From Selaginella moellendorffii (Eukaryota; Plantae; Lycopodiophyta): DNA of 64,000 nt. Below are positions 9,485-34,949 of the stretch, one piece after another. The translations under genes were made by a program, and so were the position numbers. The notes under the pieces were generated by a model that saw nothing but the letters and a program-made list of their open reading frames with translations, did no database searches and had not been told where the DNA came from. Position 1 is the stretch's first letter. The number at the start of each line of letters is the position of its first letter. The stretch lies in NCBI RefSeq assembly GCF_000143415.4, contig NW_003314274.1, positions 2,276,623 through 2,340,622 on the forward strand. Direction: 5' to 3'.

Positions 9485-11483
9485 TCAAGGATTTCCTAGC
9501 AGACGCTCAACAGCTGCATGTACATTGCCATTGGTTGCCGACAAGGCGCGGATGTTTTCTTGCGTGTCATAGAAACCCATGTCTTGAAGTTGCGATAACT
9601 GCGTCGCATACAGTTCCTCCGGGGGTAGAGCGTTCACTGCCAACACAAGAATCAAAGAAAAACACGATGTACAGCACTGGAAAAACAGTAAAATCAAAGT
9701 ACAAACCTTCGGGAGTCGCACCAAAATTGCTTCCAAGGCCGCCAAACATTCCTAGCAACGAGTTTAAATCGACATTGCCAGCGGCTCCTCCCAAGCCTCC
9801 TTGGCCCAAGCCTTGGTCCCTAAGAGAAGGAAAATGGTGTAAGTAAACCATAGAGTTTTCAAGAGTGACAACTTACTGCCCTGGCTGCTGTCGACCAAGG
9901 TGGCCTAGCAAACTCTGCTGGAGCGCAAGCATTTGCTGTGACCACAGCGTGAGGGAGAAGAAAGTTAACAATAGAAAAGGAGAAAAGGGAAAGGAAAACC
10001 TGTAAGCTCTCCGGACTGGTCATCTGCTGGAGAAACTCTGGGTTTTGCATCATTTCTCTGAACTGGGGGTTGGCATTCAGTATATTCCGGAGCTGCGGAT
10101 GCATGTTAAGGACCTGCAAGGATCACGAAAGCCATGACTGCTTTTCAATCATCAATCCGCAAACACACAGACCTGCTGAACGTACTGGGGGTTGGAAAGA
10201 ACTGACTGCATTGCCTGTAGCATTCCCGGGTTTTGCAACATCTGCTCGATCCCACCCAGTCCTCCAAGCCCGCCCAGCGCGCCCAAGCCTCCAGCGTTAC
10301 CATCACCCATGCCTCCGAGAAATCCCAAAGGCGGAAGCGTACCGAGTTGTTGTCCTGGGGTGGTGGTCGTCTCTCTCGCTGTACAAGACCAAAGGAAGTC
10401 AATGGAAAGCTCGAAAGAGAAGGAACCAAGTACCCGCGGGATTCCAAGGATTTGGAAGAGGAGCGGTGTTGGGAAGCACGGTAGCTCCCGTCCCCGCCGC
10501 TGGTGTTTGGTTCGGATCGCCAGTCCCGGCCGCTGGCGCCGTGGTAGCCGCTGGAGCTCTTCCCATCAAAGCGGCAAAAGGATTGGCCTGAGCGTCGGCT
10601 CCCTCGGCCCCGGTGCCACCCATGGTGGCGGCATTGAGCAGCGGCTCCTGGACGGTCTCATACATCCTCCGCAGCATGTTGAACCCCTCGGGCGAGGCCT
10701 CGATGTTGCTCATGGCCCGGTCGGTGTTCCTCATCATCTCCCTCATGAGCTCCGGGTTCCTGGCGGCGTCGAGCGTCTGGCGGAGAGTGGCGGGATCGTT
10801 GAGGATGTGCGCCAGGTCGGGGTTGCGGTCGATGATCTCGCGCATCTGCGGGTTGTTCATGATGAGCGTCCGCATCAGCTCCGGGTTGCTCATCAGGCTC
10901 TGGATGGCGGGCATGTTCATCATCTCGCGCATGAGGTTCGGGTTTTGCATCAGCTGCTGCTGGACCTGCTGGAACTCGGGCAGCGTCGTGGCGGTGCCCA
11001 GCGGCGCCGCGGCCCCGCCGAAGAATCCACCGTGCATGTTGGCCCCAATCCCGCCGGGAGGAGCTGCTGCCGGGGGAGCCGCTGCTGGGGATGGGGACGC
11101 TGGCGATGGCGCGGCCGGTGCGCCGCCGGGAGGCGGGGCGCCGCGGACGAGGTGGACTGTGTGATCGTTTTGTAGATCTGGAAGAATTTCGCGAGGGGAG
11201 AAGGGAGGAGTAAATACCCTAGCCAGAGAATCCCAGAGAGGAAAATTTCTTGCGGCTTACCGTAGCTGTCGAGGGAATTCTCATCCTTGAGCACGCGTCC
11301 CTTGTAGATTAGGCGCTGCTGATCGGCCGGGACCTCGGAGCGCTCGACGAGGAGGGATTTCAATCCGCGGACTGTGCTCTTGAGATCCACCGTGACCGAG
11401 AACTTGGTGCCGTTGGAGCAGCGAATGTGAACCGTGGCCGCCGCGCTGGGAGCTGCCGTCGTCGAGGCCTCCTCCGCGCTCAT
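9485..11483 (-). CDS. DSK2: Ubiquilin/DSK2 ubiquitin receptor (UBL-STI1-UBA), spliced
   Basis: UBL ([13 protein letters not shown]...HTVHLVRG), STI1 repeats ([34 protein letters not shown]), UBA ([28 protein letters not shown]...[10 protein letters not shown]). Confidence 0.95.
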
Positions 11484-20413: not shown

Positions 20414-20805
20414 TGGATTTCTATTTTTGGATGAAGTGTACAGTTCATATACATTAGATAGGGATTTTGGGCTAATGGAATATACATATTTCTGTATTCT
20501 ACACAATCTAGGCAAATTGGAAAAAATTTTATTTTACATATCAATCTTGTATGGAAAAGCAACTAACTTGCTACTGCTCCCACTGTTGTGGATTTGGCAC
20601 TGGAGGTTGCATACAAGAGACATTTGGTCTACCTTTGAGATGTAGCATACCTTCCAAGGTTGATTTTTTTATGAAGTGTGCAGTTACAATGCCATATTTT
20701 AATAACCATTAGATTGAGTTCAATCAAAACCATTCACTTTTATATATCAGTTAGGGTTTTTGGGCTAATGGAATATACACATTTCTATATTTTATACAAA
20801 TCCAA
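20414..20805. repeat. Imperfect direct repeat
   Basis: tagggattttgggctaatggaatatacatatttctgtattctacacaatc (about 20459-20508) recurs at about 20752-20801; atgaagtgt(a/g)cagtt occurs upstream of both copies. Confidence 0.6.
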
Positions 20806-21124
20806 TCACTCCTCAATGATAATTCAAGTTGCCCCTCACCTTCAACAATGTAAGTGCATAAAATATATATTATGTTTAGATCTAGCTTTTGCATTATGTA
20901 TATCTCATTTTCCTTATAACTTTTGAATATCTTCTCTTTTTTTTTTCTTCTTTTCATTCATTTTCATGGTAGAATAACACTTTCCTCCTCTTTTGACTTT
21001 GAAGTAACATGTAAACTCCTTGAATTTAAATTTTTAATACTATTCACTCAAAGACATTTAACCCCAAATTTAATCCCATTTAAGAGCATTTTTAGCTGAG
21101 GGTGCAGCTAGAGGTTTAGAAAAT

Positions 21125-21245
21125 GCTATAGATATGAAAAATGCATTTTATTACACAGGGAATTAGAGGGAAGTTTATATGGTACAACCACAAGGATTTG
21201 AAGTGCCAAGAAAAGAGCATTTGATATGTAAGTCAAAAGAGGTCA
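21125..21245 (+). mobile_element. Ty1/Copia reverse transcriptase remnant (N-terminal part)
   Basis: Frameshifted DMKNAF.../EVYMVQPQGFEVPRKEHLICK matches the Copia RT motif DVKTAFLHGELEEEVYMxQPxGF. Confidence 0.75.
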
Positions 21246-23299
21246 ATCACCAAGAACATACCATAAGACTATACATGATCTTTGGGATTTATAGATAATG
21301 GATAGTAAAGGTTTCCCTTTTAAGGATAGTGGGGTTTCCTTTTTTCTGCCTAGCCACATCACTAAATATTCTTTATATATTCTAAAAAAGAGAATATACT
21401 TGTATATACCTTATAAGATTTAAATATATTAATAACAAAGTAGCTTTTTGCATTTGATCACAAAAATGTATGATTTGTGTATCTAGTTATTTGAAAGGCA
21501 TGCTATAGATCAAGATCACCAATCACATAACTATTGTCTCAGCAAAAGTAGAAATGCCCACACTTTGACTTGATTATAAATAATAACATGAAGAAAAAGA
21601 AGTTGGCCCCAGCCAACTCGCTACTTTGCTCAACCTCTTAACCATCTCTTTAGAGCAACTAAATAGCCAAGCCTCTAAATAACTCCACTCCTATTGCCTA
21701 GATTAGCAATCTCTTATTATGTAGCCACCTCAACAAATCCGCTAGGCAAAAATACTTGCCTCTAGCTAAATCATAAAGTCCTAGATTGTGATGCTCACTA
21801 ATCCATAAGACCATTTTAGTTTGAGGCAGTTTGAATTCTTATTTATCAGCTTGGTCCTCAAACCATTTGGTCTTATTTTTTTTGTTTCGAAAGTGCTTAT
21901 TTACTCAAATGCCCCTTGGCACAAGAAAAAAATGATGTAGGATAGCTTTTTTCAACCAAAACTAAAAAAGCAACATTTGAGACTAAATAGTTTTATTGTA
22001 AATTCTTGAATTTAGACTTCCCAAGAGGTTACCCAGCATAGTACTATACAAACCCAAGGTTATTTAACCCAAGTATCCTATAATCTTTAATTGATTGGAA
22101 AAGAAGGTGCATTTTTTTTAAAAAACCCTTTCCTTTTATATTTGAATCATTATGGATCGTTTTTCAAATTATTCTCTTTTGTTGTTTATGATTTATCATG
22201 CTTCCCTGCAAGTTTACATCCTCATGAATGGAAGCTAAGAGCCACATCTCTTCTTAAAACTCCACTCTCTTAACACCCTATCCTTTAAGTCAAGCTTAGT
22301 CGGAGGCAAACTAAACTTACCAAATATCAATATCAATATATGATGTGATTCCCTTAACTAACCAATAGAGTCAGACATAAGACTTCTCTAATACCAAATA
22401 AAAGCTTTTAAATTTCAAACTTCCTGAGAGGTCATTTAGTTTAGTACTATATAAATCTAATGATGCTTTGATTGAAAAAGGGGGTGCACTTTTTGTTCAT
22501 GGGTTCTTTCTTTTTATATTTGAGCCTTTATGAATCATTTTTTAAGTCATTCTTTTTAATTATTTACACTTAACTTATGGTGGCTTTTTTTTTTTTTTTT
22601 TAATATGCACTTCTTAAAAAGTATTTGGTGGCCAAATGTGTGATGTTGCCCACCCTATTGTTGTGGCCCTTTGACAAAAAAAGGATTGTGATTGAATTGA
22701 TTAGCTAATACAAGTTATTTATGCAACCAATGCTTAGCAATTCAATTAGGGGTTTCTCATACACATTAGTAGCAGCAGGAGGATACCACTTTAATCTAAT
22801 GTAGAGCCACCACTTTGCAAAGGGATTTACATTTAGATGCTTAAGCCTAAATGTGTTGAGAACCAAATCAACTTTTCTAGTGACATCTAATATTTATTAT
22901 AGGGGTGGTGTGTGACATGATTAATAGTGTTAATTACATAGCTCTCATCTATAGCATCCACATTCTCATGTGGCTGGGTAAAAAGATGAAAAAGCATAGA
23001 AGGTGGTCCTCTTAACTAGATTGATCTTATAAAAAAAGAGATGATAAACTTGAAAAATTTCTGATTTTTATAATTGTATAGATTTTAAATAAATTCATAG
23101 ATTTAAATTTTAAAATTATTAAATAATAATTTATATTTTATAAGAATAAACTAGAATATTCAGTGATGACTACCAAGCACCAAAAACCCTTAAAGTGGAC
23201 ACACTCATGGATAGCTGACCATTATAGATGACCTATATTGGAGCAAAAAAAGAGTTTTAAACAAATTAAATCTACTTTATCATAAAGATTTAAAATGAC

Positions 23300-24345
23300 T
23301 GGTCTTGGAGAGATCTTATATTGTCATAGTTTACAATTTGTAAGAGATAGAGGAAAAAAATTAATATTTCTCCATCAATAAAAATTTACAATGAAATTAA
23401 TTGATTATTATTTTGTTGGAAGCTTGAAATATATAGTTCATACACCAGCAAGTACATCCCTCAACCATATACCATGTGCTCAAATGAGGCTTTGGGATGA
23501 GGGGGAGAGAAAAAAAATGGAAAGTAAGCCATTTAGGAATATGGTGAGAAACTTCTTGTACTTATCGACAATATCAAGTCCTAATTTTGCAATAGTTGTA
23601 TTATTTGTAAGCCAATACATTCAGTTTGTAACTATAAATATTTTCAAATACCTTCATGAAACTCCAATATAGAGAATAAAATACTCAGGGAGTATAAGCT
23701 CATAGGGAACATTACTAACTGGATTTGCTAATGCAAATTTACATACGAGACAAAGACATTAAAAAATCTATTTTAGAATGGTGTTTCAGAATGTATGGAA
23801 GAATGTATGAAAGAGTTATAAGTTACATGTGAAACAGAGTATATAGCTATAGCATCTGCTACAAAAGAGACAATTTGGACTAAGCTTTTAGTGGACTTAG
23901 TTGTGGAACAAGGGATACCCACCCAAATTTACAATGATAATACCTTTGCCATTATATTGGCTCAAATCTAGTGCTTCATAGCACCTTTCTACCTTATTCA
24001 AATCATCCATAGACAGGTAATTTTAGATTACATACCTGCTAATGATATGGTTATAGATATTTTAACATAGTGTTTTAAGAAAAAGATCTCTAAATTCAGA
24101 GCAATCTTAAAAGTTTTACTTAAGGGGGAGTATTACAAGTAAGATTGTTATGTTAGCCAGTTGGAGGTGAGTAGTGAGCAACTTGGAGAATGAGTAAGAA
24201 TGGGCAGCTAGAGAACCAAATGACACTCAACAAAGAATCACTAGGGGATATAATTATAAATTAGAGAGGGAATCAGAGTGGACCTTACTTCAATAGAAGT
24301 TTGGTAGTTTTCTTCACATTCATTCATTCATATACTATTTGCACA
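23300..24345 (+). mobile_element. Ty1/Copia RT-RNase H remnant, PPT and probable 3' LTR
   Basis: LGEILYC..QFVRDRGKKLIFLHQ; KPFRNMVRNFLYLSTISSPN; TCETEYIAIASATKETIW; PTQIYNDN; YIPANDMVIDILT; PPT AAGGGGGAG 24122-24130. LTR end approximate. Confidence 0.8.
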
Positions 24346-26126
24346 GTCTGCCCCTTAAAAACCATTAGCGTTTTAGGAGTATAATTAAATGATTTTTTTT
24401 TCTAAGCTACTTAGCAGCATTCAAATTTCTTGAAAGGGTACAATGATTCATCAAATCACTATTAGAACTGCATAGACATCATTTCATTTGAGTTGGCTAC
24501 TGAAGCATTATAAGACTTTATAAATAATCTATGAATGAATGAATGAAGAGATCTTTCACAATATGAAGAAAAATTGTGGCAATTGTGAACTGAGTTAAGT
24601 ATTTTCTTAAGGCTAGGGTTAGAAAAGTGATCTTAGAAATATTTGGCACAATCATAATAAAAAATTTAATTAAGTAGGGATAGATCAATTGGGAGAGTGT
24701 TAGATTGAAGTGTGTTTGATCCATGCTCACGTAAAAAATACAAAATTGGTGTTATTCTATTATGTTTAATGATGAAATATTATTTTTTACATTTTATTTG
24801 AAAATTTAATATTTTTTAAAAACAATTGCATAAAAACCCCTCAACGTTTTTATATTTACAAATATGCACATTCGAAGTTTTAAAATTTCAACTTTTTGAA
24901 TTTTGAATAAAAAAAGTTTTAGATAATGCAAAATATCAATAAGAAATTCATAATAAGTTTAAAAACTTTAAATTAATGTCATGAATAGGCATCAATTATG
25001 ACCATATCAACCACCCCACAATGAAATTATTTTATATCTTTCTTAAGAATTTAGTATAAATACAATTCCTTTCTAGATAGAAATCTATGGCACCAGCATA
25101 CCATATATTTGCAAATGTTCAACATCAATAGGATAAAACACACCCATATATATTTTGCAATACAAATTAAACAAATAATACATGTTAGCATAAGCTTCTT
25201 CCTCCATAAGATTTCATTAGTTATATATGCATAAGGCAATCTATTTTTTTAAAATTCAAAGCATAACTAATACCATGCTAATATGTTCACCACATGAGTG
25301 TAGTCTTATGTCTATATTTTGAATATACTAGGATTCAAGGGCATAATAATATAGTAACGAGCTTGAGAAATCACATCATAAAAAAGTTTTTCCGCATTGT
25401 TCACTAACTTTAGTTACACCACTTTTGCCATATGCTTCATCACATTTTAATTGGTGCTGAAAAAATCAATTGATAACTTTGCATTGAATGTGCTCAACAT
25501 TTTGAAATGTTGGAAGGACTAAATTCAAGTATCATTATTTTCAACATTAATTGTGCCAAATGCAAGAGGGAATAATAAGTGTTCAACATTCAAACAAGCA
25601 TGCATCTTATGTATTTCGACTTTAAATGTGTATCAAGATTGCTCAAAAGTTTACAATGCACAGAACTAATGAAATTAACACCATATAGGATAAATAGGCT
25701 TTTAAAAGTAAAACTTTCATGGTTATCTAAATTGCTTGAAAAGAAAATTTCCATATAAGTAAACTGTATCATGTCTTGAATTTCTCTTCTCTTTTCCTCT
25801 CTGAGCAACAAAATAAAAAACATCATACTTTTGATGCATTTCAGTTATCATGCTTTTTGGACATTATTTAATTCATCCCTCACTCATTGTTTGAAATTAT
25901 TTATGATCCAATGCTACCATCTTGATCAAGCAAAACATATTTTTGTCAACAAGAGAAGGATGAAGTTTCTATAGACACTTTGGATTGAATTGTGCATCAT
26001 TTTCACTCTACAATCAATTCAAAATACCTAATAATAACTACTGCCATTTTTAGCTCGTTCCGGTATGAAGTTTAAATGATTTCCACCAAATTTGGGGGGA
26101 TTTTAAATAGCAATAACAACCAGTGT

Positions 26127-27040
26127 CAGCTGACATTGGAAAAGTATCCTGGGTCCTTGAGATAGACGAAAAACACTGGGAAGAAAATCAACGATGGCTC
26201 TCGGGTCGTCGATGAGGTAGACTGCCGTGATCGACTTCCCGGCAAGCGATTATGAGAACCGGGAACCAGTCGCCCAGAGCTGCCGAGTGGACGTCCTCAG
26301 TGAGGAAAAATCGAGGTGTGACGAGGTAGACGAGAGCGAGGGACAGCAGCGGTCTTTTGTTCTGCCTCCAAACTCGATGGAGAAGCTCACTCAGCGTTGA
26401 GGCGTGGAATTTGGTGAAGTTCCTCCTGGATGGGAAGAGTGGTGACGAGGCAGATCACTGCAGGTGATGAAGAAGACGTTGGCGCTGCTGCGAAGGCCGT
26501 CGGATTTGGAACGCAATGCGGCCTTGGTCACGACTCGCACTAGAACTCCTGCTGTTAAAGAAAAATGATGAACTTGTGAGAATGCGGATGAATGAGCTCA
26601 AACGAAGAGGTTGCAAAGAAGAAATCCTAAAACACAGTCACACAAGGCCACTCGAACAAGAATGAATAGAAGAATAGATCGAAGTAACAAGGAAGAAGAA
26701 AGACACAAATCTCAAACAGTAGAGTGAAAACGATCTAGCGAATCCTATGACAAAGAATGGCGATGAAACAAAAGCAAAGCCAAGCGAAACAAGAATGACT
26801 AGAAGAATAGATCGAAGAAACAAAGGACTAGATGCAAATTTCAAACAGTAGAGTGAAAACGATCTAGCGAGCATGGCAAAGAATGGCGATGAAACAAAAC
26901 GATCTAGATCGATAGAGTTACCCAGCAGTGTCGGCAACGAGCGCTTGCATGTAGCGCTGAGGTCCCCCGCCGATCACCAGGCTGCCCTGGACGACAGCAT
27001 CGGCGAGCCCAGTAGCAGCGATTGTAATGCGCTGGACGGT
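26127..27040 (-). pseudogene. Deleted duplicate of the ENT nucleoside transporter gene
   Basis: Blocks collinear with 31010-31975, including the repetitive intron, with many short deletions. Confidence 0.88.
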
Positions 27041-28333
27041 GAAACAGCTTGACAAAGTCCTGAAAACTCCAGTTTTGACTGAAAGGAAGTGTTTGCGAAG
27101 CGTTTCTGCAGGAAAGATTTATTTGCAGTGTTGTATATGTAAACACTGGACAAAATGTGGACTGAGTGTCGGAGTCGGCTACTCTGATCAAGAACAAAAA
27201 GGAGAGATTTTAGCTCTTTGACAAGGTAGAGAACAAAACAATTTAATTTGCCAAAAGTTATTTGCTTACTTGGAGAACCACTTTGCCTGCTCTCTCCGTG
27301 TGAGCTTTCGAATTCATCCAAGCAGAAAGCTTCTCCGACTGGGATCTTGACGCGTCGTACCTCTTTCGCAAGCCGAGCTATTTGTTCCAGGCCTTCGGCA
27401 TCCGTCCTCATGATTAACCAAGAGTAGTCTGCGCAGGCTCCAATGTTAAAACGTATGCTGAGGAGAGATCAAGCTTTACCAATGCCATGCGACTGAGTGT
27501 ACTGCATTCGCTTCCGCAAGAGCGTCGCTGTCGCAATGCCGCCTCCAACAATGAGGCCGTATTTGTCTGCCAGTTTCACCGCTTCTCCCTGCGACGAGTG
27601 CTTCGTTTGAGCACAAGACATTATCTAAGGAGAGAGTGTAAGCGTTTACCTGTAGCGTCATCTAGTGCTTCAAGAGCTTTACTCCAAGTGCTTCCGTGGC
27701 CTGCACACCAATTGTGTCAAGCACAGCATCGAATCACCAGGTAAGTTGTGTTCTGGAACGTAGAAGTTTTTCGAAAGGTTTGTACTAACGGTGGATGGTA
27801 CCTCGGAAAGTCCGAGGACACGTCCATAGCTTGTAGTTCCTCAGCGCCAGATTCCTCGGCGGGACTGCAACTTCGTTTGCCACAAGTGGCAGCAACCGAG
27901 CAGCCAGTAGCTAGAGCGAGCTGAATGACCGCTAAAGCCCACCGCCCCTCCCAGCCCATTATCAGCACCTTCTGCCTGCATCCAAAGTCTAAGATTGCGA
28001 CTGCAACAACCATATCACAGACAAAAAACCTCTGCTCTCTCATTCATGGTACACGCAGAACGTTTACTCGCTCTTCATTCTGGCAGTGCTGCGGCAAAGG
28101 GAATGGCAGCTGCTTCCTGGAACAAAGACACAGCAGTGCTTAGTTTTGACGAGACAAACAAGTGCAAAGTGAAACAAGCAAGAAGAAGTTGGAAAGAACG
28201 AGAAAGAAACAGCAAGAAGAAAACGGAACAACGAAACACGAGATACTTGGAACGCAGAGAAACGAACAAAGGAAAGAAAGAAAAAAGGCACATACCACAT
28301 GAGTGAGTTGAGGACAAGCTGTTCCTCTTGGAG
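27041..28333 (-). pseudogene. Deleted duplicate of the orphan-ORF tail and RTN4IP1-like oxidoreductase (5' exons missing)
   Basis: 27370-27615 is almost identical to 33488-33735; EAAAIPFAA and QKVLIMG exons present with deletions; similarity ends at about 28333. Confidence 0.88.
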
Positions 28334-28902
28334 CATAGAAGACATATGGAAAACATATGGAAGTTAAAAATGCATGTACTATGGACAGATAGATCTATGT
28401 CAATGGATATGATAATGAAAACACGAATGTGGCATCCCCAGAAATGCAAGAAAATAGAAACTAGAAAACACTTACTGGATGGCGTAGCGGATTACTTCGA
28501 TTATGCTACCCCGCCAATCTTCTGCCACAATAAAAGTCCGATCAATCTCATTGCTGCCCCTGCTTACATTCCATCGCGATCGCCTTGCCCTCGCTTGCCG
28601 AAGAAGCCCCGTGACTTTGCCCTAACTATCGACGATCAAATTTGGCTACACGTGGACGGCTGTCAGGCTTTCTTCCTTCCTTCGTTGTTGCGAAGATTTA
28701 TAGTAGCTCTTGCATTGTCCAAAGCTCTGTGTAGAGGCTAGGGCAACGCTGGGGCGAGACCGTGCGCGATACCGTGACAGGGCGAGGATATTTCGATCGA
28801 ATGCGGGTGATCGCGAGCTCGGCTCTTTAGTTTTTCGAGGTGAAAGAACTGTGCTTTTGCAAGCGATGGCAAGTTCTAGTCTTCCTTTGCCGCAGGGAAA
28901 CC

Positions 28903-29598
28903 ATGACTCCATGGTGCTGCTGCTGGCCGCGGGAGAAGAAAGCTCCTTCCGAGGAGCAGGGACCTCCGCCCAATGCACACGACGATGCCGCCGTGGATCC
29001 GGAGGAGAAGCAGCCAAGCGCTATGCGGCTCGACGAAAATGCGGTCTCTTTCGGTGTCTCTGGCGCTCATTGTGACCGCACCTTTGTTGCAGGATCGAAA
29101 GCGGCTGCCCACCACCAGGTAAACTCTCGATGATCACAACGCTAGTATGGTATGATTTCTTTCTAGCAGCCCTGATAGTTTCGCACTGTGTACCAGGCCG
29201 ATCACGAGGTAACTCGGGTCTTCGTTGCCATATACACCACACTCGACGAGCGCGACCACTGGGCAATCTGGCTCCAAGATGCCCAAGGGAATCCCACGAT
29301 CCTTCAGATTGAAGACGATTGTGGCAACCGAGGCTACTACGTTGCTCAGCCCGTCTACAAGCGACCGGATCGATCGGCGAGGCTTCTGGAGGCTCTGGAG
29401 TGCGGGGAGATCGATGCAATCCATCACGAGATGGCTGTGGCGACCATCCAAGGAGAGCCTGTGGATAACGAGAGCGAGACGTGGAATTGCCAGGCTTAGA
29501 TTGAGGAGGCGCTCCACACCCTCGCTAAACGAGGATTCATCCGGCTGGTTCCAGGCGCTTTGGACGAGCTCAAGGCACGGAGGCAATACTGGCAGTGA
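28903..29598 (+). pseudogene. Fungal-type HW...NCQxW (DUF6540-like, permuted papain-fold) protein with a premature stop; possible 5' exon 28903-29118
   Basis: VFVAIY...DHWAIWLQD...ILQIEDD...VDNESETWNCQA*IEEALHTL...RRQYWQ*; TAG at 29497-29499 sits where the conserved Trp (TGG) is expected and the frame stays open to 29598; candidate 60-nt GT-AG intron 29119-29178. Confidence 0.6.
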
Positions 29599-29720
29599 CC
29601 GAATATTCAAGCCATTTGAACGAGAATTCCGTTAGTAAATATTCCTGAATATGCTTTAAGACCTTTTCTGTTAAGCTTAAATGGATGTGCGTTGACCAAA
29701 GGATAATTAGGGCTTCGGAC

Positions 29721-30591
29721 ATGAGCTATCCGGCGCCATTCGTTCGCGACGCTACCGCCGAGCACAGGCACACGGTCATCCTTCTCCACGGGCGTGGAAG
29801 CAGTGGCAGCGAGCTCGCCGAGGAGCTGGAGGAGACGCTGGGCTCGGGCAGCGCCAACCTCTTCCAGCGCTTCCCGGGCGTGCGCTGGGTGTTCCCGAGC
29901 GCGCGCCCCCGCTGGTCGAGCGTCTTCGTGGTTTGACGCGCCATCGCTGTGCGATATAGGCTATAAGCAGCACCTCCAGGTCGAGGGCCTGCGCCAGTCG
30001 GTCGACTTCCTGCTGCGCGTGATCGAGGAGGAGATCGATCGCGTCGGGAGCGCGAGCAAGGTGGTGCTGGGCGGGATCAGTCAGGGGCAAGCAACGGCCT
30101 TGCACGCGCTAGTCTGTGGGCGACACAGGCTGGGAGCGTTTGTGGGCGCCAGTGGATGGCTTCCCTTCGCTGACAAGATTGAAGAGGTTCTGGCCGATCA
30201 TGATCAAGGGGAGGACGCGGACCCGAGGCCGATCGCAATCAAGCGCGTGTCCGAGTTCTTGCGAGGCGAGCTCGGTCTAGAGGTTGAGGATTTGGGCGAT
30301 TCGTTTACGAGTTTGCGGGCCACGCCGGTGTTCTTGGGCCACGGTACGGATGACAACCTGATCGAGTTGGATCTGGGAAAGCAGGCCCGTGATCTGCTGA
30401 CCAGGATGGGGATCGAGTTGGTTCTGGGAAAGCAGGCCCGTGACATCCTGACCGGGATGTGGATGAGCGTTGCGGGGAAGGAGTAGGAGGGCGCGGATCA
30501 AGACGGCCATTGGATCAACGAGCCGGAGCAAGTTGATGACACCGTAGCGTCCTTGAGTGATGCGCTCGAGGACATTGTCAAACAAGACTAG
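29721..30591 (+). pseudogene. Fungal-type phospholipase/carboxylesterase (acyl-protein thioesterase-like alpha/beta hydrolase), intronless, disrupted
   Basis: HTVILLHGRGS, RWVFPSA, WFD, GGISQG (Ser), TPVFLGHGTDD (Asp), KE*EGADQDGHWINEPEQVDD (His); frameshift near 29930, 51-bp in-frame duplication 30361-30462, TAG at 30484-30486. Confidence 0.82.
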
Positions 30592-30660
30592 CTCACGCCA
30601 AAGGTTGAATCTTAGTCAATTGAAAATTCATTAACTACCAACGTAATGAAGTAATTATAA

Positions 30661-30665
30661 GCGGG

Positions 30666-30706
<41 letters not shown>

Positions 30707-30733
30707 CCGCGTGTTCGATCCACGCTCACCGCA
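30661..30733 (+). tRNA. trnF-GAA: tRNA-Phe (GAA), cytosolic plant type
   Basis: GCGGGGATAGCTCAGTTGGGAGAGCGTCAGACTGAAGATCTGAAGGCCGCGTGTTCGATCCACGCTCACCGCA; full cloverleaf, A and B boxes. Confidence 0.96.
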
Positions 30734-30827: not shown

Positions 30828-32312
30828 TCATAGCACCCAAACCCATCCTACTATAGAGCCAAGGGAGAGTCCGGCCACGAGGAACACAACCAGTAAGATC
30901 CCAGTCGTCTCGGACTCCTCCACGGGCACGAGCTTTGGTGCCTTGATCATGATCGCGCTCGTGTAGTATCCATTTGTGATCCCCAGCAGCGCTGACACCA
31001 AGAACACCGGAACCTCGGTGCCAAGTATCCTGGGTCCATGGAGACAGACGAAAAACACTGGGAAGAAGATCAGCCTCGCGATGCAGCCACCAACGATGGC
31101 TTTCGGGTCGTCGATGAGGTAGACCGCCGTGATCGACTTCCCGAGGAGGTCGCAAACGTTGTAGCAAGCGATGATGAGAACCGGGAACCAGTCGCCCAGA
31201 GCCGCCGAGTGGACGTCCTCGGTGAGGGAGCCGGGAAAGATCGAGAGTGTGATGAGGTAGACGAGAGCGAGAGACAGCAGCAGTCCTTTGTTCTGGCTCC
31301 AAACCCGATGGAAGCTCACTCGTCGATGAGGTGTGGAATCGGCTAGGAGAAGTGAGTCCGAGTCTTCCTCTTGCCGTGCTACTTTGGTGGAGTTCTTCTT
31401 GAGGTGGTAGCGGATGACGGGAAGAGTGGTGACAAGGTTGTAGGAGACGAGGCAGATCACCATGAAGATGACGGTAGTGATGAAGTAGACGTTCGCACTG
31501 CTGCGAAGGCCGTCGGGTGTGGAAGGCAATGCGGCCTTGGTCACGACTCGCAGGAACGAAACTAGAACACCTGTTTGCGATAACTTGTGAGAGTGTGAAG
31601 CAAGTTGCAAAGAAGAAATCGTAAAACACAGTCACACAAGGAGAATGAATAGAAGCATAGATCGAAGTAAAGGAAGAAGAAAGACACAAATCTCAGACAG
31701 AAGAATAGTGATGAAACAAAAGAGCAAAACAAGAATGCATAGAAGAATAGATAGAAGAAAGAAAGGACTAGACGCAAATCTCAAACAGTAGAGTGACAAC
31801 GATCTAGCGAACACTATGGCAGACTTACCCGACGCAGCAGTGCCGGCAACGAGCGCTTGCATGTAGCGCTCCGGTAGCTCCCCCGCCGATCCCACAAGGC
31901 TGCCCTGGACGAGGGCATCGGCGAGCCCCGTGACTCCAGTAGCAGCGATTGTGATGTAATGCGTGGCGCTGGACGGCTTGCTCACGCTCTCGTCCATGAT
32001 TGGAACGATGAGCATCATGAGGAGGAAAAGGACAAGGCCCAGATTGATCCGGATCCGCGGCTCGATGGCGCCGGCCTTGAATGTGAGGTAGAGCAGCAGC
32101 AGGAGGGCCGGGAACATGTAGAAGATCGAGAATACCCGATCGATGTGCGTGCCAGGGTAAAGGAAATCGAAATAATCCACCGCTGTGATGAAGGCGTTCC
32201 ACGGGAGGAGGAATCCGGCGCCAAGGATGAAGAAGCTGATGTAGGCAAGCTTGAAGTGATCGCGCGGCTCCTTCTCATCCTGGAAATCCAGCTTCTCCTC
32301 GTCGTTCTCCAT
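30828..32312 (-). CDS. ENT1: Equilibrative nucleoside transporter (ENT1-like), 2 exons
   Basis: LAYISFFILGAGFLLPWNAFITAVDYF, LVQGSLVGSAGELPERYMQALVAGTAASG|VLVSFLRVVTKA, TLSIFPG, LLGITNGY; intron approx 31572-31828. Confidence 0.92.
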
Positions 32313-32383
32313 CGCGTCAGACGACCTCTTGGAAGAACCCTAAAATCTGGGATCTAGGGCTTTGAAAAAATTATATTTTGGCT

Positions 32384-33106
32384 ATGAAGAGGAGGGCCCC
32401 AACGGCGTCGTGCGGCGCCAGGCGCGCAATCACTCCGGGTAAGAAATTCGTGGCCGCTGCAAATGACGCACAGCCAAATCCCGTCACGCCGCCCCTCCAG
32501 CAATCGACATCGCCCGAAATGCCGCTGCCAGAGACTGGATCCAAGCGGAGGAGGATGAAATTGGGGGCTGCGAGCAGGGATTCTACCGCTTCGTCTAGCC
32601 GATCGATTTCTTCCAGCGAAGTGGTTTACGGGAGCCCCGTGATGGGCCTGGCAGTGGGGCGTTTCAGAGATCGGCGCAAGACCAGGCCAACGGCCATTCT
32701 CACCACGATCGATGGGAACGATTGTTTGACTTTGAGGCCTGCCATGGCGTCCGTCCGCTGGCTGAGCTCCTCCACCCTGGACAGGAGCTCCTCCAGGGAT
32801 GGCAGTGGCGACAAAGAGAATGAGACTAGCTTTGAGTTTCCATTGGCCGGAGGTGAGGGAGGAGGATCGATCGAGCAAGCTGACAATCTTTCTCCAGAAA
32901 CTCTGGAGGAGACAAACGTTTTTCCCGGGACTCTGGAGGAGACAAACGTAACTCTGGAGGAGAATCTCTCGAGAAACAGCTCGACAAAGTCCTGGAAAAC
33001 TCCACTATTAACTCTTCCAGGAACTCTGGAGGAGAATCTCTCGAGAAACAGCTTGACAAAGTCCTGGAAAAAGCCACTTTTAACTTCTCCAGAAGAGAAT
33101 CTCTAG
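32384..33106 (+). CDS. Orphan Ser/Arg-rich ORF with tandem C-terminal repeats
   Basis: About 240-codon ORF divergent from ENT, telo-like motifs upstream, basic KRRRMK stretch; no recognisable domain. Confidence 0.45.
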   Translation: MKRRAPTASCGARRAITPGKKFVAAANDAQPNPVTPPLQQSTSPEMPLPETGSKRRRMKLGAASRDSTASSSRSISSSEVVYGSPVMGLAVGRFRDRRKTRPTAILTTIDGNDCLTLRPAMASVRWLSSSTLDRSSSRDGSGDKENETSFEFPLAGGEGGGSIEQADNLSPETLEETNVFPGTLEETNVTLEENLSRNSSTKSWKTPLLTLPGTLEENLSRNSLTKSWKKPLLTSPEENL

Positions 33107-33122
33107 AGAAACAGCTTGACTT
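32899..33122 (+). repeat. Coding minisatellite (actctggaggaga... units)
   Basis: TLEETNV x2, TLEENLSRNS.TKSWK.PLLT x2, plus a third degenerate unit carrying the stop. Confidence 0.8.
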
Positions 33123-33360
33123 TTAACTGAAAGGAAGCGTTGGCGATTTCTGGAAGATGGATTTATTTGCAAAGAACCTGGACGACGAGAGCTCTCTATA
33201 CGTAAACTCTGGACAAAATGTACAAACTGCTGGGGCTGAGCGTCGGAGTCGACTACTCTGATCAAGAAAAAAAACACATGAAGAGATTTTAGAGCTCTGA
33301 CAAGGTAGAGAACAAAACAATTTACCTTGTGTAAGTGCATTATTTGGAAAAATCCTTTGC

Positions 33361-34949
33361 TTACTCCTGCTGGACTTGGAGCACCACTTTGCCCTGTGAA
33401 TCCTTGTTTTCTCTCGCCGTTTGAGCTTTCGCGGCTTCATCCAAACTGAAAGTTTCTCCGACTGGGATCTTGAGGCGTCCTTCTTTCGCAAGCCGAGCTA
33501 TTTGTTCCAGGCCTTCGGCATCCGTCCTCATGATTATCCAAGAGTAGTCTGCGCAGGCTCGAATGTTAAAACGTATGCTGAGGAGAGATCAAGCTTTACC
33601 AATGCCATGCGACTGAGTGTACTGCATTCGCTTCCGCAAGAGCGTCGCTGTCGCAATGCCGCCTCCAACAATGAGGCCGTATTTGTCTGCCAGTTTCACC
33701 GCTTCTCCCTGCGACGAGTGCTTCGTTTGAGCACGAGGAGGCTATAATCTAAAAAGAGATTCACCTGCAGCGTCATGTAGTGACCACCACGCTTCAGCAC
33801 GTTAACTCCAAGTGCTTCTGTGGTCTCCACACCGATTGTGTCAAGTACAGCATCGAATCGCCAGGTAAGTTGCTCTCTTGTGTTCTGGAAGCGTAGACGT
33901 TATTCGAAAGCTTTGTAGTAAAGGTGGATTATACCTCGGAAGTGTAGTCCACGATAAGCTCGGCGCCAGCTTCCCCGACGCGACTACAACTTCGTTTGCC
34001 ACAAGTGGCAGCCACCGAGCAGCCAGCAGCTCGAGCGAGCTGAATGGCTGCTAAGCCGACCGCGCCTCCCCCGCCCATGATCAGCACCTTCTGCCTGCAC
34101 CCCAAAGTCTAAGATTGCAACTGCAACAGCCATATCACAACGAAATGATAAAACCTCTGCTCTCTCATTCATGCTACACGCAGAACGTTTACCCGCTCTT
34201 CATTCTGGCAGTGCTCCACAGTGCTCGCCACGCAGTCAGTGCGGCAAAGGGAATGGCAGCTGCTTCCTGGCACATAGACACAGCAGCGTTTAGTCGACAA
34301 AGCAAACAAGTGCAAAGTCAACAAAGCAAGGAGAAAAACAACGCTAACACGAAGAAACAGCTAGAAAACGGAACAGCGAAGCATGGAACCAAACTTCGCG
34401 AAGAAACAGCAAGAAACCAGCAAAAGGAAAAAAAAAAAAAAAAAAAAACATCACATACCACATGAGTGAGTGACTTTGGCTTGAGGGCAAGCTGTTCCTC
34501 TTGGAGTATCGCGTAGTCACTGTAAGTACCTCGCACAGCAGTCGGATGAAGCGCTCCAAAGACATGCTGGCCTACGTGGAGCCGCTTCACTCCATTGCCG
34601 ATGGCCACAATCTCTCCACTCACATCTCTTCCCAGAACGATTGGAAGAAGAGGCTGGAAAAGAGACCTCCCGTATCCTTCTCTCATCTGTGACAAACAAA
34701 CAGTAGTTAGATAAATTTCTGGTGGAGATTGCTACACGCTCGATCGTTTCTTACCTTGATATCCAGAGGATTCACGCCGGCGGCGACCGTGCGGACAAGC
34801 ACTTCCTCGGCCTCCAAATGCGGCACGGGCACATCCTTGCGCAGCTCCAAGACCTCGGGGCCGCCGAATCGCGGCAGCACGACCGCCCGGCATGTCGAGA
34901 TGCTCCTGCTGTGGCCACGGCAGTAGGGCGAAGCGAGCCAGCGCCTCAT
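33361..34949 (-). CDS. RTN4IP1-like mitochondrial NAD(P)H quinone oxidoreductase (MDR superfamily), spliced
   Basis: RAVVLPRFGGPEVL, GVNPLDIK|MREGYGRSLF, LGRDVSG, EAAAIPFAALTAWRAL, GGGGAVG, FDAVLDTIG, GKVVL; mitochondrial-type presequence. Confidence 0.9.

What the first reader, a model, noticed from the sequence alone, without database searches (positions are those of the whole stretch)
28335..30660. Two-gene fungal-type island next to tRNA-Phe: candidate multi-gene fungus-to-plant horizontal transfer
Seen: two adjacent co-oriented GC-rich genes with uninterrupted core coding regions, unlike the intron-rich host genes. They lie between the two copies of a local duplication and end about 70 bp before tRNA-Phe. 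Knowledge: the esterase motifs (HTVILLHGRGS, RWVFPS.R.RWS, SL.DI...Q.LQ.EGLR.SV, EGADQDGHWINEPEQVDD) resemble filamentous-ascomycete phospholipase/carboxylesterases rather than plant APTs. The upstream HW...NCQxW protein resembles fungal hypothetical (DUF6540-like) proteins. From memory, a phospholipase/carboxylesterase family has been reported as a fungus-to-Selaginella transfer; this needs checking. Inference: a second linked fungal-type gene implies transfer or assembly of a multi-gene block, which may be undescribed.
Basis: partly seen in the sequence, partly recalled or inferred. Interest (0 to 1): 0.85.

Follow-up and report, generated by a model that had tools for sequence, protein, structure and literature searches.

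The report
Decayed two-gene fungal block in Selaginella
A spikemoss (Selaginella moellendorffii) locus holds two neighbouring genes of fungal type, both broken in this copy, and the same two gene families also sit side by side in many fungal genomes, so they probably entered the plant together on one piece of fungal DNA.

Summary
Window 29188-29598 is a DUF6540-type gene (SELMODRAFT_410870). Window 29721-30591 is an Abhydrolase_2 esterase (SELMODRAFT_410871), ending 69 bp before tRNA-Phe.

Both genes are pseudogenes in this copy:
- DUF6540 has a TAG on its near-invariant Trp.
- The esterase has a 17-nt deletion, a 51-nt tandem duplication, and a TAG before the catalytic His.

A syntenic second scaffold, probably the other haplotype, has an intact intronless esterase but a gutted DUF6540 gene and a broken tRNA.

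The three Selaginella esterase paralogs form one clade nested in ascomycete sequences, beside Pezizomycetes. A fungus-to-plant transfer of this esterase family was already published (Richards 2009).

What appears new:
- All named DUF6540 relatives are fungal.
- In about 10 of 12 independent fungal loci examined, DUF6540 lies within 3.5 kb of the same esterase subfamily, often with an APH-type kinase.
- One Pezizales-like contig has the Selaginella order and orientation.

Co-transfer of a two-gene fungal fragment is therefore the best reading (about 0.7).

The local duplication and the tRNA look incidental. Read-level junction checks could not be run. The scan separately noted the intact esterase on other DNA of this genome (s1-361366).

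The parts
28903..29118 (+). 5' exon of the public gene model SELMODRAFT_410870 (72 aa), with no counterpart in fungal DUF6540 proteins
   Evidence: P0066 sequence mapped. No Pfam hit. The fungal HMM does not cover it.
29119..29196 (+). GT-AG intron implied by the gene model
   Evidence: Junction HHQ|ADHE of P0066 read on the sequence.
29188..29598 (+). DUF6540-homologous coding region (permuted papain / PPPDE-CLN5-LRAT-like fold). It is a pseudogene in this copy.
   Evidence: phmmer E 1e-24 to Thermothelomyces DUF6540. Fungal-only HMM: 130 bits, plus a colinear tail. H-box His and NC-motif Cys are present.
29497..29499 (+). Premature TAG replacing the near-invariant Trp of the NCQxW motif (TGG in L001)
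   Evidence: Alignment A1; family alignments A3 and A4.
29599..29720 (+). 122-bp spacer between the two fungal-type genes
   Evidence: Sequence.
29721..30591 (+). Abhydrolase_2 (APT/lysophospholipase-type) esterase, SELMODRAFT_410871. It is a pseudogene in this copy.
   Evidence: Pfam 53 bits. 100% identity to P0001. Compared with the intact L001 ORF.
29927..29936 (+). Site of a 17-nt deletion (before 29928) that shifts the frame into a TGA at 29934-29936
   Evidence: window lacks 17 nt present in L001; ORF end.
30360..30461 (+). 51-bp tandem duplication inside the esterase (17 extra codons)
   Evidence: Repeat family D16. One search places the extra 51 nt at 30410-30460.
30484..30486 (+). TAG replacing Tyr244, upstream of the catalytic His (DGHW)
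30661..30733 (+). tRNA-Phe(GAA), intact here and broken by a 17-nt deletion in L001. Probably an incidental host neighbour.
   Evidence: ARAGORN; alignment A2.
30828..31610 (-). Last large exon of the host equilibrative nucleoside transporter gene that flanks the island
   Evidence: ORF. PF01733 on the syntenic L001 gene.
26142..28336 (+). Partial upstream duplicate of the downstream transporter and alcohol-dehydrogenase genes (66-98% identity to 31091-34471)
20647..28835 (.). About 8 kb present in this copy but not in L001: an AT-rich block plus the partial duplicate
   Evidence: blastn of L001 against the window; composition.

Best explanation
This is the Selaginella moellendorffii locus where a fragment of fungal (Pezizomycotina) genomic DNA carrying two neighbouring genes became integrated between ordinary plant genes.

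The two genes are:
- A DUF6540 protein, a small Cys/His enzyme of the permuted papain fold (the fold of CLN5, DeSI/PPPDE and PLAAT/LRAT).
- An APT/lysophospholipase-type serine esterase (Abhydrolase_2).

In fungi the two families, often with an APH-fold kinase, form a conserved neighbourhood. I infer that they act on a common acylated substrate.

After the transfer the esterase duplicated to two further Selaginella loci and stayed intact there. At the original locus the DUF6540 gene was kept long enough to remain about 50% identical to fungal proteins, and is now decaying.

- In this window's copy, DUF6540 has one nonsense codon. The esterase is dead: a 17-nt deletion, a 51-nt duplication, and a nonsense codon before the catalytic His.
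- In the syntenic copy, probably the other haplotype, the esterase is an intact 278-codon intronless ORF. There the DUF6540 gene has lost 326 bp and carries a frameshift.

Shown: gene identities, the lesions, synteny of the two copies, fungal affinity, and fungal linkage.
Inferred: a single co-transfer event, the donor lineage, and any biochemical coupling.
For: Identity and lesions.

Integration in the plant genome:
- The same island lies between the same plant genes on two scaffolds (a 483-aa gene upstream; nucleoside transporter, ADH and Raptor downstream).
- Substitution identity is 98.3-98.6% in the flanks, 96.7% in the esterase and 93.7% in the DUF part.
- The two copies carry different disabling mutations.

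Fungal affinity of the esterase (ML tree):
- The three Selaginella paralogs are monophyletic (99/93).
- They are sister to a Pezizomycetes clade (88/79).
- They sit inside an ascomycete-only clade (100/99).
- The best non-Selaginella match is Rhizina at 60% identity. Solved plant APT-family proteins reach only about 50 bits.

Fungal affinity of DUF6540:
- 44 phmmer hits and 88 profile hits. All named ones are fungal except one firefly transcriptome entry, and no other plant appears.
- Rooted on basidiomycetes, the Selaginella sequence falls inside a Pezizomycotina clade (SH-aLRT 97), in the same unresolved group as the Pezizales-like copy.

Linkage in fungi. The esterase of the same subfamily lies within 3.5 kb of DUF6540 in:
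- Thermothelomyces fergusii, Xylaria nigripes and Aspergillus glaucus.
- A Logan contig (L007) and a JGI contig (L008).
- 8 of 14 metagenome loci; 11 of the 14 also have the APH kinase.

L008, whose esterase groups with Sphaerosporella (100/100), has DUF6540 upstream of and co-oriented with the esterase, as in Selaginella.

Fold: AF2 pLDDT 94. Best structural matches are CLN5 (Z 8.5), DeSI-1 (7.5), TseH (7.3), Aichivirus 2A (6.4) and PLAAT4 (5.0). This agrees with the published classification (PMC10318531).
Against: - The DUF6540 tree is poorly resolved (139-153 columns), so no sister group is supported.
- Most fungal loci have the pair divergent or convergent, not co-oriented. The one matching arrangement (L008) is an unnamed metagenome contig with a 3.2-kb spacer against 122 bp here. 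Its DUF6540 copy has Gln for the H-box His.
- Three named Pezizales esterase loci (Rhizina, Maublancomyces, Sphaerosporella) have no DUF6540 within 10 kb.
- No trace of the APH partner is in the Selaginella loci.
- No read-level confirmation of the junctions or of the stop codons was possible.
Confidence: 0.7

Rival explanations
1. Two independent fungus-to-plant transfers (or a later second insertion) happened to land next to each other. The fungal linkage of the two families would then be irrelevant to the plant arrangement.
For: Gene orientation and spacing in Selaginella differ from most fungal loci. The DUF6540 tree gives no resolved sister. The esterase paralogs at L002 and L011 have no DUF6540 remnant.
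Against: - The genome has one DUF6540 locus and three esterase loci in roughly 100 Mb. Landing 122 bp apart by chance has odds of the order of 1e-4 or less (my inference from genome size).
- The same two families are neighbours in about 10 of 12 independent fungal loci.
- One Pezizales-like contig shares the plant's order and orientation.
Confidence: 0.08
2. Vertical inheritance: both families are ancient eukaryotic genes kept in Selaginella and fungi and lost from all other plants.
For: Abhydrolase_2 as a superfamily is universal.
Against: - The Selaginella esterases are nested inside ascomycete sequences rather than outside fungi.
- DUF6540 falls inside Pezizomycotina when rooted on basidiomycetes.
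- No named plant or algal sequence appears in any of three large searches.
- This reading needs many parallel losses plus retained linkage.
Confidence: 0.05
3. Fungal contamination or a chimeric misassembly of the Selaginella genome.
For: Read-level junction support could not be obtained.
Against: - The island sits in the same plant gene context on two different scaffolds.
- Flanks diverge at haplotype level, and the two copies have independent lesions in the island.
- Contigs from 17 runs in 7 studies hold parts of the stretch.
- Two further intronless paralogs lie among plant genes such as KNOX, a receptor kinase and RCC1.
Confidence: 0.02

Closest known systems
Fungus-to-plant transfer of a phospholipase/carboxylesterase family protein (Richards et al. 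2009, Plant Cell 21:1897; seen only through reviews PMC8227670 and PMC12448838)
   Same: Same protein family (Abhydrolase_2) and same direction of transfer. The second review lists lycophytes as recipients of three of the five fungal genes. My tree reproduces a nested position within ascomycetes.
   Different: That report, as summarised, concerns a single gene. This report adds a second fungal-type gene physically linked to it, donor-side linkage of the two families, and the decay state of the locus in two copies. I could not read the original paper to see which gene models it used.
Acyl-protein thioesterase / lysophospholipase family (human APT1/LYPLA1, APT2; Arabidopsis SOBER1; maize APT2)
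   Same: Same alpha/beta-hydrolase family. The GxSxG Ser, the Asp and the His are present in the intact L001 copy.
   Different: Only about 35-50 bits to the solved members. This is a distinct ascomycete subfamily with the HGRGS and RWVFPS motifs. No activity has been tested. The window copy is a pseudogene.
Permuted papain-fold thiol enzymes: CLN5, DeSI-1/PPPDE, PLAAT/LRAT (H-box/NC), NlpC/P60
   Same: - The predicted DUF6540 fold matches these best: Z 8.5, 7.5, 5.0 and 7.3.
- The His comes before the Cys in the sequence, with an NC-type motif.
- DUF6540 is listed with LRAT and NlpC_P60 as a Cys-His-His family in PMC10318531.
   Different: Sequence identity is 9-14%. The Z values are only moderately above background for this tool. 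No substrate is known. The family is essentially confined to fungi.
Multi-gene fragments moved between grasses (Alloteropsis; recalled from memory, not checked here)
   Same: Several neighbouring genes are transferred on one piece of genomic DNA and keep donor synteny.
   Different: Those are plant-to-plant and recent, with DNA-level identity. Here the donor is a fungus, the event is old, and only protein-level similarity and gene adjacency remain.

Membership tests
Abhydrolase_2 (PF02230) esterase | Profile match above Pfam's gathering score | tested here: met
   53.3 bits against a cut-off of 23 for 29929-30483. The N-terminal piece scores 20.5 bits.
Abhydrolase_2 (PF02230) esterase | Ser-Asp-His triad encoded in one open frame | tested here: not met
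   Window copy: the Ser (GISQG) and Asp (GTDD) codons are present, but the His (DGHW) lies beyond TAG 30484-30486 and a frameshift at about 29928. The triad is complete in the syntenic L001 ORF.
DUF6540 (PF20174) | Profile match above Pfam's gathering score | tested here: inconclusive
   22 bits against a cut-off of 27 for the 103-aa piece before the stop. A profile built from fungal PF20174-bearing proteins gives 130 bits, E 7.8e-39. phmmer gives E 1e-24 to a PF20174 protein.
DUF6540 (PF20174) | Conserved H-box His and NC-motif Cys (HWA ... WNCQxW) | tested here: met
   His24, Trp99, Asn100, Cys101 and Gln102 are present. The following conserved Trp is replaced by TAG.
Fungus-to-plant horizontal gene transfer | Recipient sequences nested within the donor group in a supported phylogeny | tested here: met
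   Esterase: ascomycete-only clade 100/99, Selaginella clade 99/93, sister to Pezizomycetes 88/79. DUF6540: inside a Pezizomycotina clade (SH-aLRT 97), but the immediate sister is unresolved.
Fungus-to-plant horizontal gene transfer | No orthologues in other plants or algae | tested here: inconclusive
   No named plant other than Selaginella appears. However, many hits are unnamed, two of the searches depend on shared words, and lycophyte genomes were not searched directly.
Fungus-to-plant horizontal gene transfer | Physical integration among host genes (not contamination) | tested here: met
   Two scaffolds carry the same plant flanks with independent lesions. Read-level support could not be obtained.
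Multi-gene block transfer | The same genes are neighbours in the donor lineage | tested here: met
   Esterase within 3.5 kb of DUF6540 in L005, L006, L007, L008, L012 and L013-L020. Absent in L009 and L021-L026.
Multi-gene block transfer | Same order and orientation as in a donor-lineage genome | tested here: inconclusive
   Only one contig (L008, Pezizales-like by its esterase) has DUF6540 upstream of and co-oriented with the esterase, with a 3.2-kb spacer.

The most novel reading that the evidence does not exclude
A single fragment of Pezizomycotina genomic DNA carrying at least two functionally linked neighbouring genes (DUF6540 thiol enzyme plus APT-like esterase) was transferred into the Selaginella lineage. 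It still shows donor gene linkage. As far as I could find, this would be the first fungus-to-plant transfer documented as a multi-gene block. It would also reveal a conserved fungal esterase-DUF6540-APH kinase module of unknown function.
Probability: 0.55. Interest if true: 0.65.

Novelty: new variant of a known kind. Interest (0 to 1): 0.55.

Why it matters
- Fungus-to-plant gene transfers are few and have been described gene by gene. A block that keeps donor linkage shows that a stretch of genomic DNA was taken up, not a single processed transcript. Linkage is also evidence for transfer that is independent of the tree.
- The locus is a natural record of what happens afterwards. One gene was kept and multiplied. 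Its partner was kept for a long time and is now being lost, with different lesions in two copies of the same species.
- The work gives the uncharacterised fungal family DUF6540 a first functional context: a conserved neighbourhood with an APT-like esterase and an APH-fold kinase, and a CLN5/PPPDE/PLAAT-like fold. This is testable in Aspergillus or Neurospora-type models.

Tried and rejected
- **Read laying:** No read-level check of junctions, stop codons or expression was possible.
- One local script translated the whole window in six frames for an offline HMM scan, which included that stretch.
- **Original paper:** Richards 2009 could not be read. I relied on two reviews. Ma et al. 2022 is not held. 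No paper holds the four SELMODRAFT ids.
- **APH remnants:** none in the window, L001 or L002.
- **DUF6540 remnants beside the other paralogs:** none in L002 or L011.
- **DUF6540 near named Pezizales esterases:** none within 10 kb in L003, L004 or L010.
- **tRNA genes at fungal loci:** none relevant, so the tRNA-Phe is not part of the transferred block.
- **Foldseek against PDB:** nothing at E <= 0.001. The exhaustive aligner was needed.
- **The search for related loci with the broad alignment A4:** failed for lack of a conserved stretch. It worked with the closer set A5.
- **Local duplication as part of the island:** rejected, because L001 lacks the upstream copy.
Full report
**What is there.** The window comes from Selaginella moellendorffii. 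The esterase piece at 29929-30483 is 100% identical to SELMODRAFT_410871, and the upstream piece is 99% identical to SELMODRAFT_410870. ARAGORN finds one tRNA in the window, tRNA-Phe(GAA) at 30661-30733. The esterase's last stop codon (30589-30591) lies 69 bp before it. Pfam gives Abhydrolase_2 at 53 bits against a cut-off of 23 for the esterase. It gives DUF6540 at 22 bits, below the cut-off of 27, for the 103 residues at 29188-29496. A profile built only from fungal DUF6540 proteins scores 29179-29496 at 130 bits (E 7.8e-39). It also matches the 32 residues after the stop (29500-29595) colinearly at E 0.013. In the second copy of the locus the same region reads through without a stop. The two-gene observation is therefore real.

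**Both genes are broken in this copy.** I compared the window with locus L001 (GL377631.1:780893-801729), which carries SELMODRAFT_121880.
- DUF6540: the gene has a TAG at 29497-29499 where L001 has TGG. Fungal homologues have a near-invariant Trp there, in the NCQxW motif.
- Esterase: it lacks 17 nt just before 29928, a frameshift that runs into TGA 29934-29936.
- Esterase: it carries a 51-nt tandem duplication (30360-30461).
- Esterase: Tyr244 is replaced by TAG (30484-30486), ahead of the catalytic His.

In L001 the esterase is an uninterrupted ORF of 291 codons, 278 from the Met shared with fungal proteins. There the DUF6540 gene has lost 326 bp, has a 2-bp frameshift and a 12-bp deletion, and the tRNA-Phe has a 17-nt deletion.

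**The second copy is probably the other haplotype.** L001 is colinear with the window over its whole 20.8 kb. Substitution identity is 98.3-98.6% in the flanking plant genes, 96.7% in the esterase and 93.7% in the DUF6540 remnant. That flank level is what I recall for the two haplotypes in this assembly (my knowledge, not tested). The higher divergence inside the island fits relaxed constraint.

The window has about 8 kb that L001 lacks (20647-28835). This comprises an AT-rich block and a partial duplicate of the downstream transporter and ADH genes.

**Not contamination.** The island sits between the same plant genes on two scaffolds: an unnamed 483-aa gene upstream, and nucleoside transporter, zinc ADH and Raptor downstream. 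The two copies have independent lesions. Two more intronless paralogs (SELMODRAFT_79756 in L002; an "APT1" entry in L011) lie among plant genes such as a receptor kinase, RCC1 and KNOX. Contigs of 17 runs from 7 studies hold parts of the stretch. Junctions and stop codons are therefore not confirmed at read level.

**Fungal affinity of the esterase.** After the Selaginella paralogs, the best matches are Pezizales: Rhizina undulata at 60% identity and 321 bits, then Maublancomyces and Sphaerosporella. Other Pezizomycotina follow. Solved plant members of the APT family (Arabidopsis SOBER1, maize APT2) reach only about 50 bits.

In the ML tree (66 rows, LG+C20+F+G4):
- The three Selaginella paralogs are one clade (99/93).
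- That clade is sister to a Pezizomycetes clade (88/79).
- Both lie inside a clade of 55 rows in which every named non-Selaginella sequence is an ascomycete (100/99).

This fits one acquisition followed by duplication. The Pezizales genes and all three Selaginella paralogs are intronless. A fungus-to-plant transfer of a phospholipase/carboxylesterase family protein was reported by Richards et al. 2009, according to PMC8227670. PMC12448838 lists lycophytes as recipients of three of that paper's five fungal genes. I could not read the original. The esterase part of the finding is thus already known.

**Fungal affinity of the upstream gene.** An exhaustive phmmer search of 1.84 billion representatives found 44 relatives of up to 57% identity. 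Those that carry names are from Thermothelomyces, Xylaria, Aspergillus and Penicillium. A profile search found 88 more. Every named one is fungal, mostly Pezizomycotina with two basidiomycetes, apart from one firefly transcriptome entry that is probably fungal contamination. No plant appeared.

Rooted on the basidiomycetes, the Selaginella sequence (read through with X at the stop) falls inside a Pezizomycotina clade (SH-aLRT 97). It sits in an unresolved group with the Pezizales-like copy and a large, mostly sordariomycete clade. With about 140 columns no sister can be named.

**The two families are neighbours in fungi.**

| Locus | Arrangement |
|---|---|
| Thermothelomyces fergusii (L005) | esterase(-), APH(+), DUF6540(+) within 4.5 kb |
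| Xylaria nigripes (L006) | APH(+), esterase(-), DUF6540(+) |
| Aspergillus glaucus (L012) | esterase(-), DUF6540(+), APH(-) |
| Logan contig L007 | esterase(-), DUF6540(+) |
| JGI contig L008 | DUF6540(+) upstream of esterase(+), the Selaginella order and orientation |
| Penicillium (L009) | no esterase within 10 kb |

The L008 esterase groups with Sphaerosporella at 100/100, so this contig is Pezizales-like.

A pattern scan of JGI metagenome contigs returned 14 DUF6540 loci. Eight have the esterase within 2 kb and eleven have the APH kinase. After collapsing near-duplicates this is about 10 of 12 independent loci with the pair. All partner esterases that I placed in the tree fall in the same 55-row clade as the Selaginella genes. 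Arrangements vary (divergent, convergent, co-oriented), as is usual for fungal functional neighbourhoods.

Against the simple picture, three named Pezizales esterase loci lack DUF6540 within 10 kb. Sphaerosporella does keep the APH neighbour.

**What the proteins probably do.** The intact esterase has the GxSxG Ser, the Asp and the His of APT/lysophospholipase enzymes. An AlphaFold model of the Xylaria DUF6540 protein (pLDDT 94) matches best:
- CLN5 (Z 8.5, 125 residues aligned)
- DeSI-1/PPPDE (Z 7.5)
- the NlpC/P60 effector TseH (Z 7.3)
- Aichivirus 2A, an H-box/NC protein (Z 6.4)
- PLAAT4 (Z 5.0)

All are permuted papain-fold thiol enzymes. Foldseek gave only CLN5, at E 0.012. This agrees with a published classification of DUF6540 as a Cys-His-His papain-like family alongside LRAT and NlpC_P60 (PMC10318531). 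Known members of that fold remove or transfer acyl groups. I therefore infer that the fungal module (thiol acyl-hydrolase or transferase, serine esterase, kinase) processes one acylated substrate. This is inference only.

**Best reading.** A fungal genomic fragment with DUF6540 and the esterase entered the Selaginella lineage as one piece. The esterase spread to two more loci. DUF6540 must have been under selection for a long time, since it is still about 50% identical to fungal proteins and carries only one lesion in this copy. It is now being lost, with different lesions in the two copies.

Chance adjacency of two separate insertions, 122 bp apart in a genome of roughly 100 Mb, is very unlikely given the donor-side linkage. 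The tRNA-Phe and the flanking duplication look incidental: there is no tRNA at the fungal loci and no upstream duplicate in L001.

**Novelty.** The esterase transfer is published. I found no paper naming these gene models, and only one paper mentions DUF6540 at all. The linked second gene, the donor-side linkage and the fungal three-gene module appear undescribed, within the limits of the held library. Another first-stage note of this scan (s1-361366) flagged the intact 837-bp esterase elsewhere in this genome. That is the L001 copy, and I confirmed it is intact.

Noticed in passing
L005 6694-11187; L006 6157-10414; L012 8341-12070; L013-L017; L010 10001-12316; L021-L026: Fungi have a conserved three-gene neighbourhood: an Abhydrolase_2 esterase of this subfamily, DUF6540, and an APH-fold (PF01636) kinase, in varying order and orientation. 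Some loci keep only two of the three (esterase+APH in Sphaerosporella; DUF6540+APH in the JAABU* contigs).
   Followed up: partly
window 20647-28835: About 8 kb present here but absent from the syntenic copy L001. It comprises an AT-rich block (23-35% GC, 20500-26000) with no long ORFs, plus a decayed partial duplicate of the downstream transporter and ADH genes (26142-28336).
   Followed up: partly
L001 about 10880-10960 (counterpart of window 30661-30733): The tRNA-Phe next to the island is intact in the window but has a 17-nt internal deletion in L001, and ARAGORN no longer calls it there. Each copy of the locus has thus lost different elements.
   Followed up: yes
L001 10001-10837 (SELMODRAFT_121880 model, P0002): The public 255-aa model splices out 23 codons that lie in an uninterrupted ORF. 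Pezizales homologues have residues in that region, so the annotated intron is probably an artefact.
   Followed up: partly
L008 2915-3463: The Pezizales-like DUF6540 copy has Gln in place of the H-box His, Gly in place of the Trp before NCQ, and an insertion near the N-terminus. It may be inactive or decaying.
   Followed up: no
P0067 (2560 aa): A very long protein matches residues 28-63 of the DUF6540 piece in 14 separate stretches (E 2e-29). It appears to be a repeat protein built from a fragment-like unit. Origin unknown.
   Followed up: no
P0144: A UniRef entry assigned to the firefly Photinus pyralis is a typical DUF6540 protein that groups with Epichloe. It is probably fungal contamination of a transcriptome.
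   Followed up: partly
window 32950-33092: Two tandem copies of a 71-72-nt unit (92% identical) within the host gene region downstream of the island.
   Followed up: no
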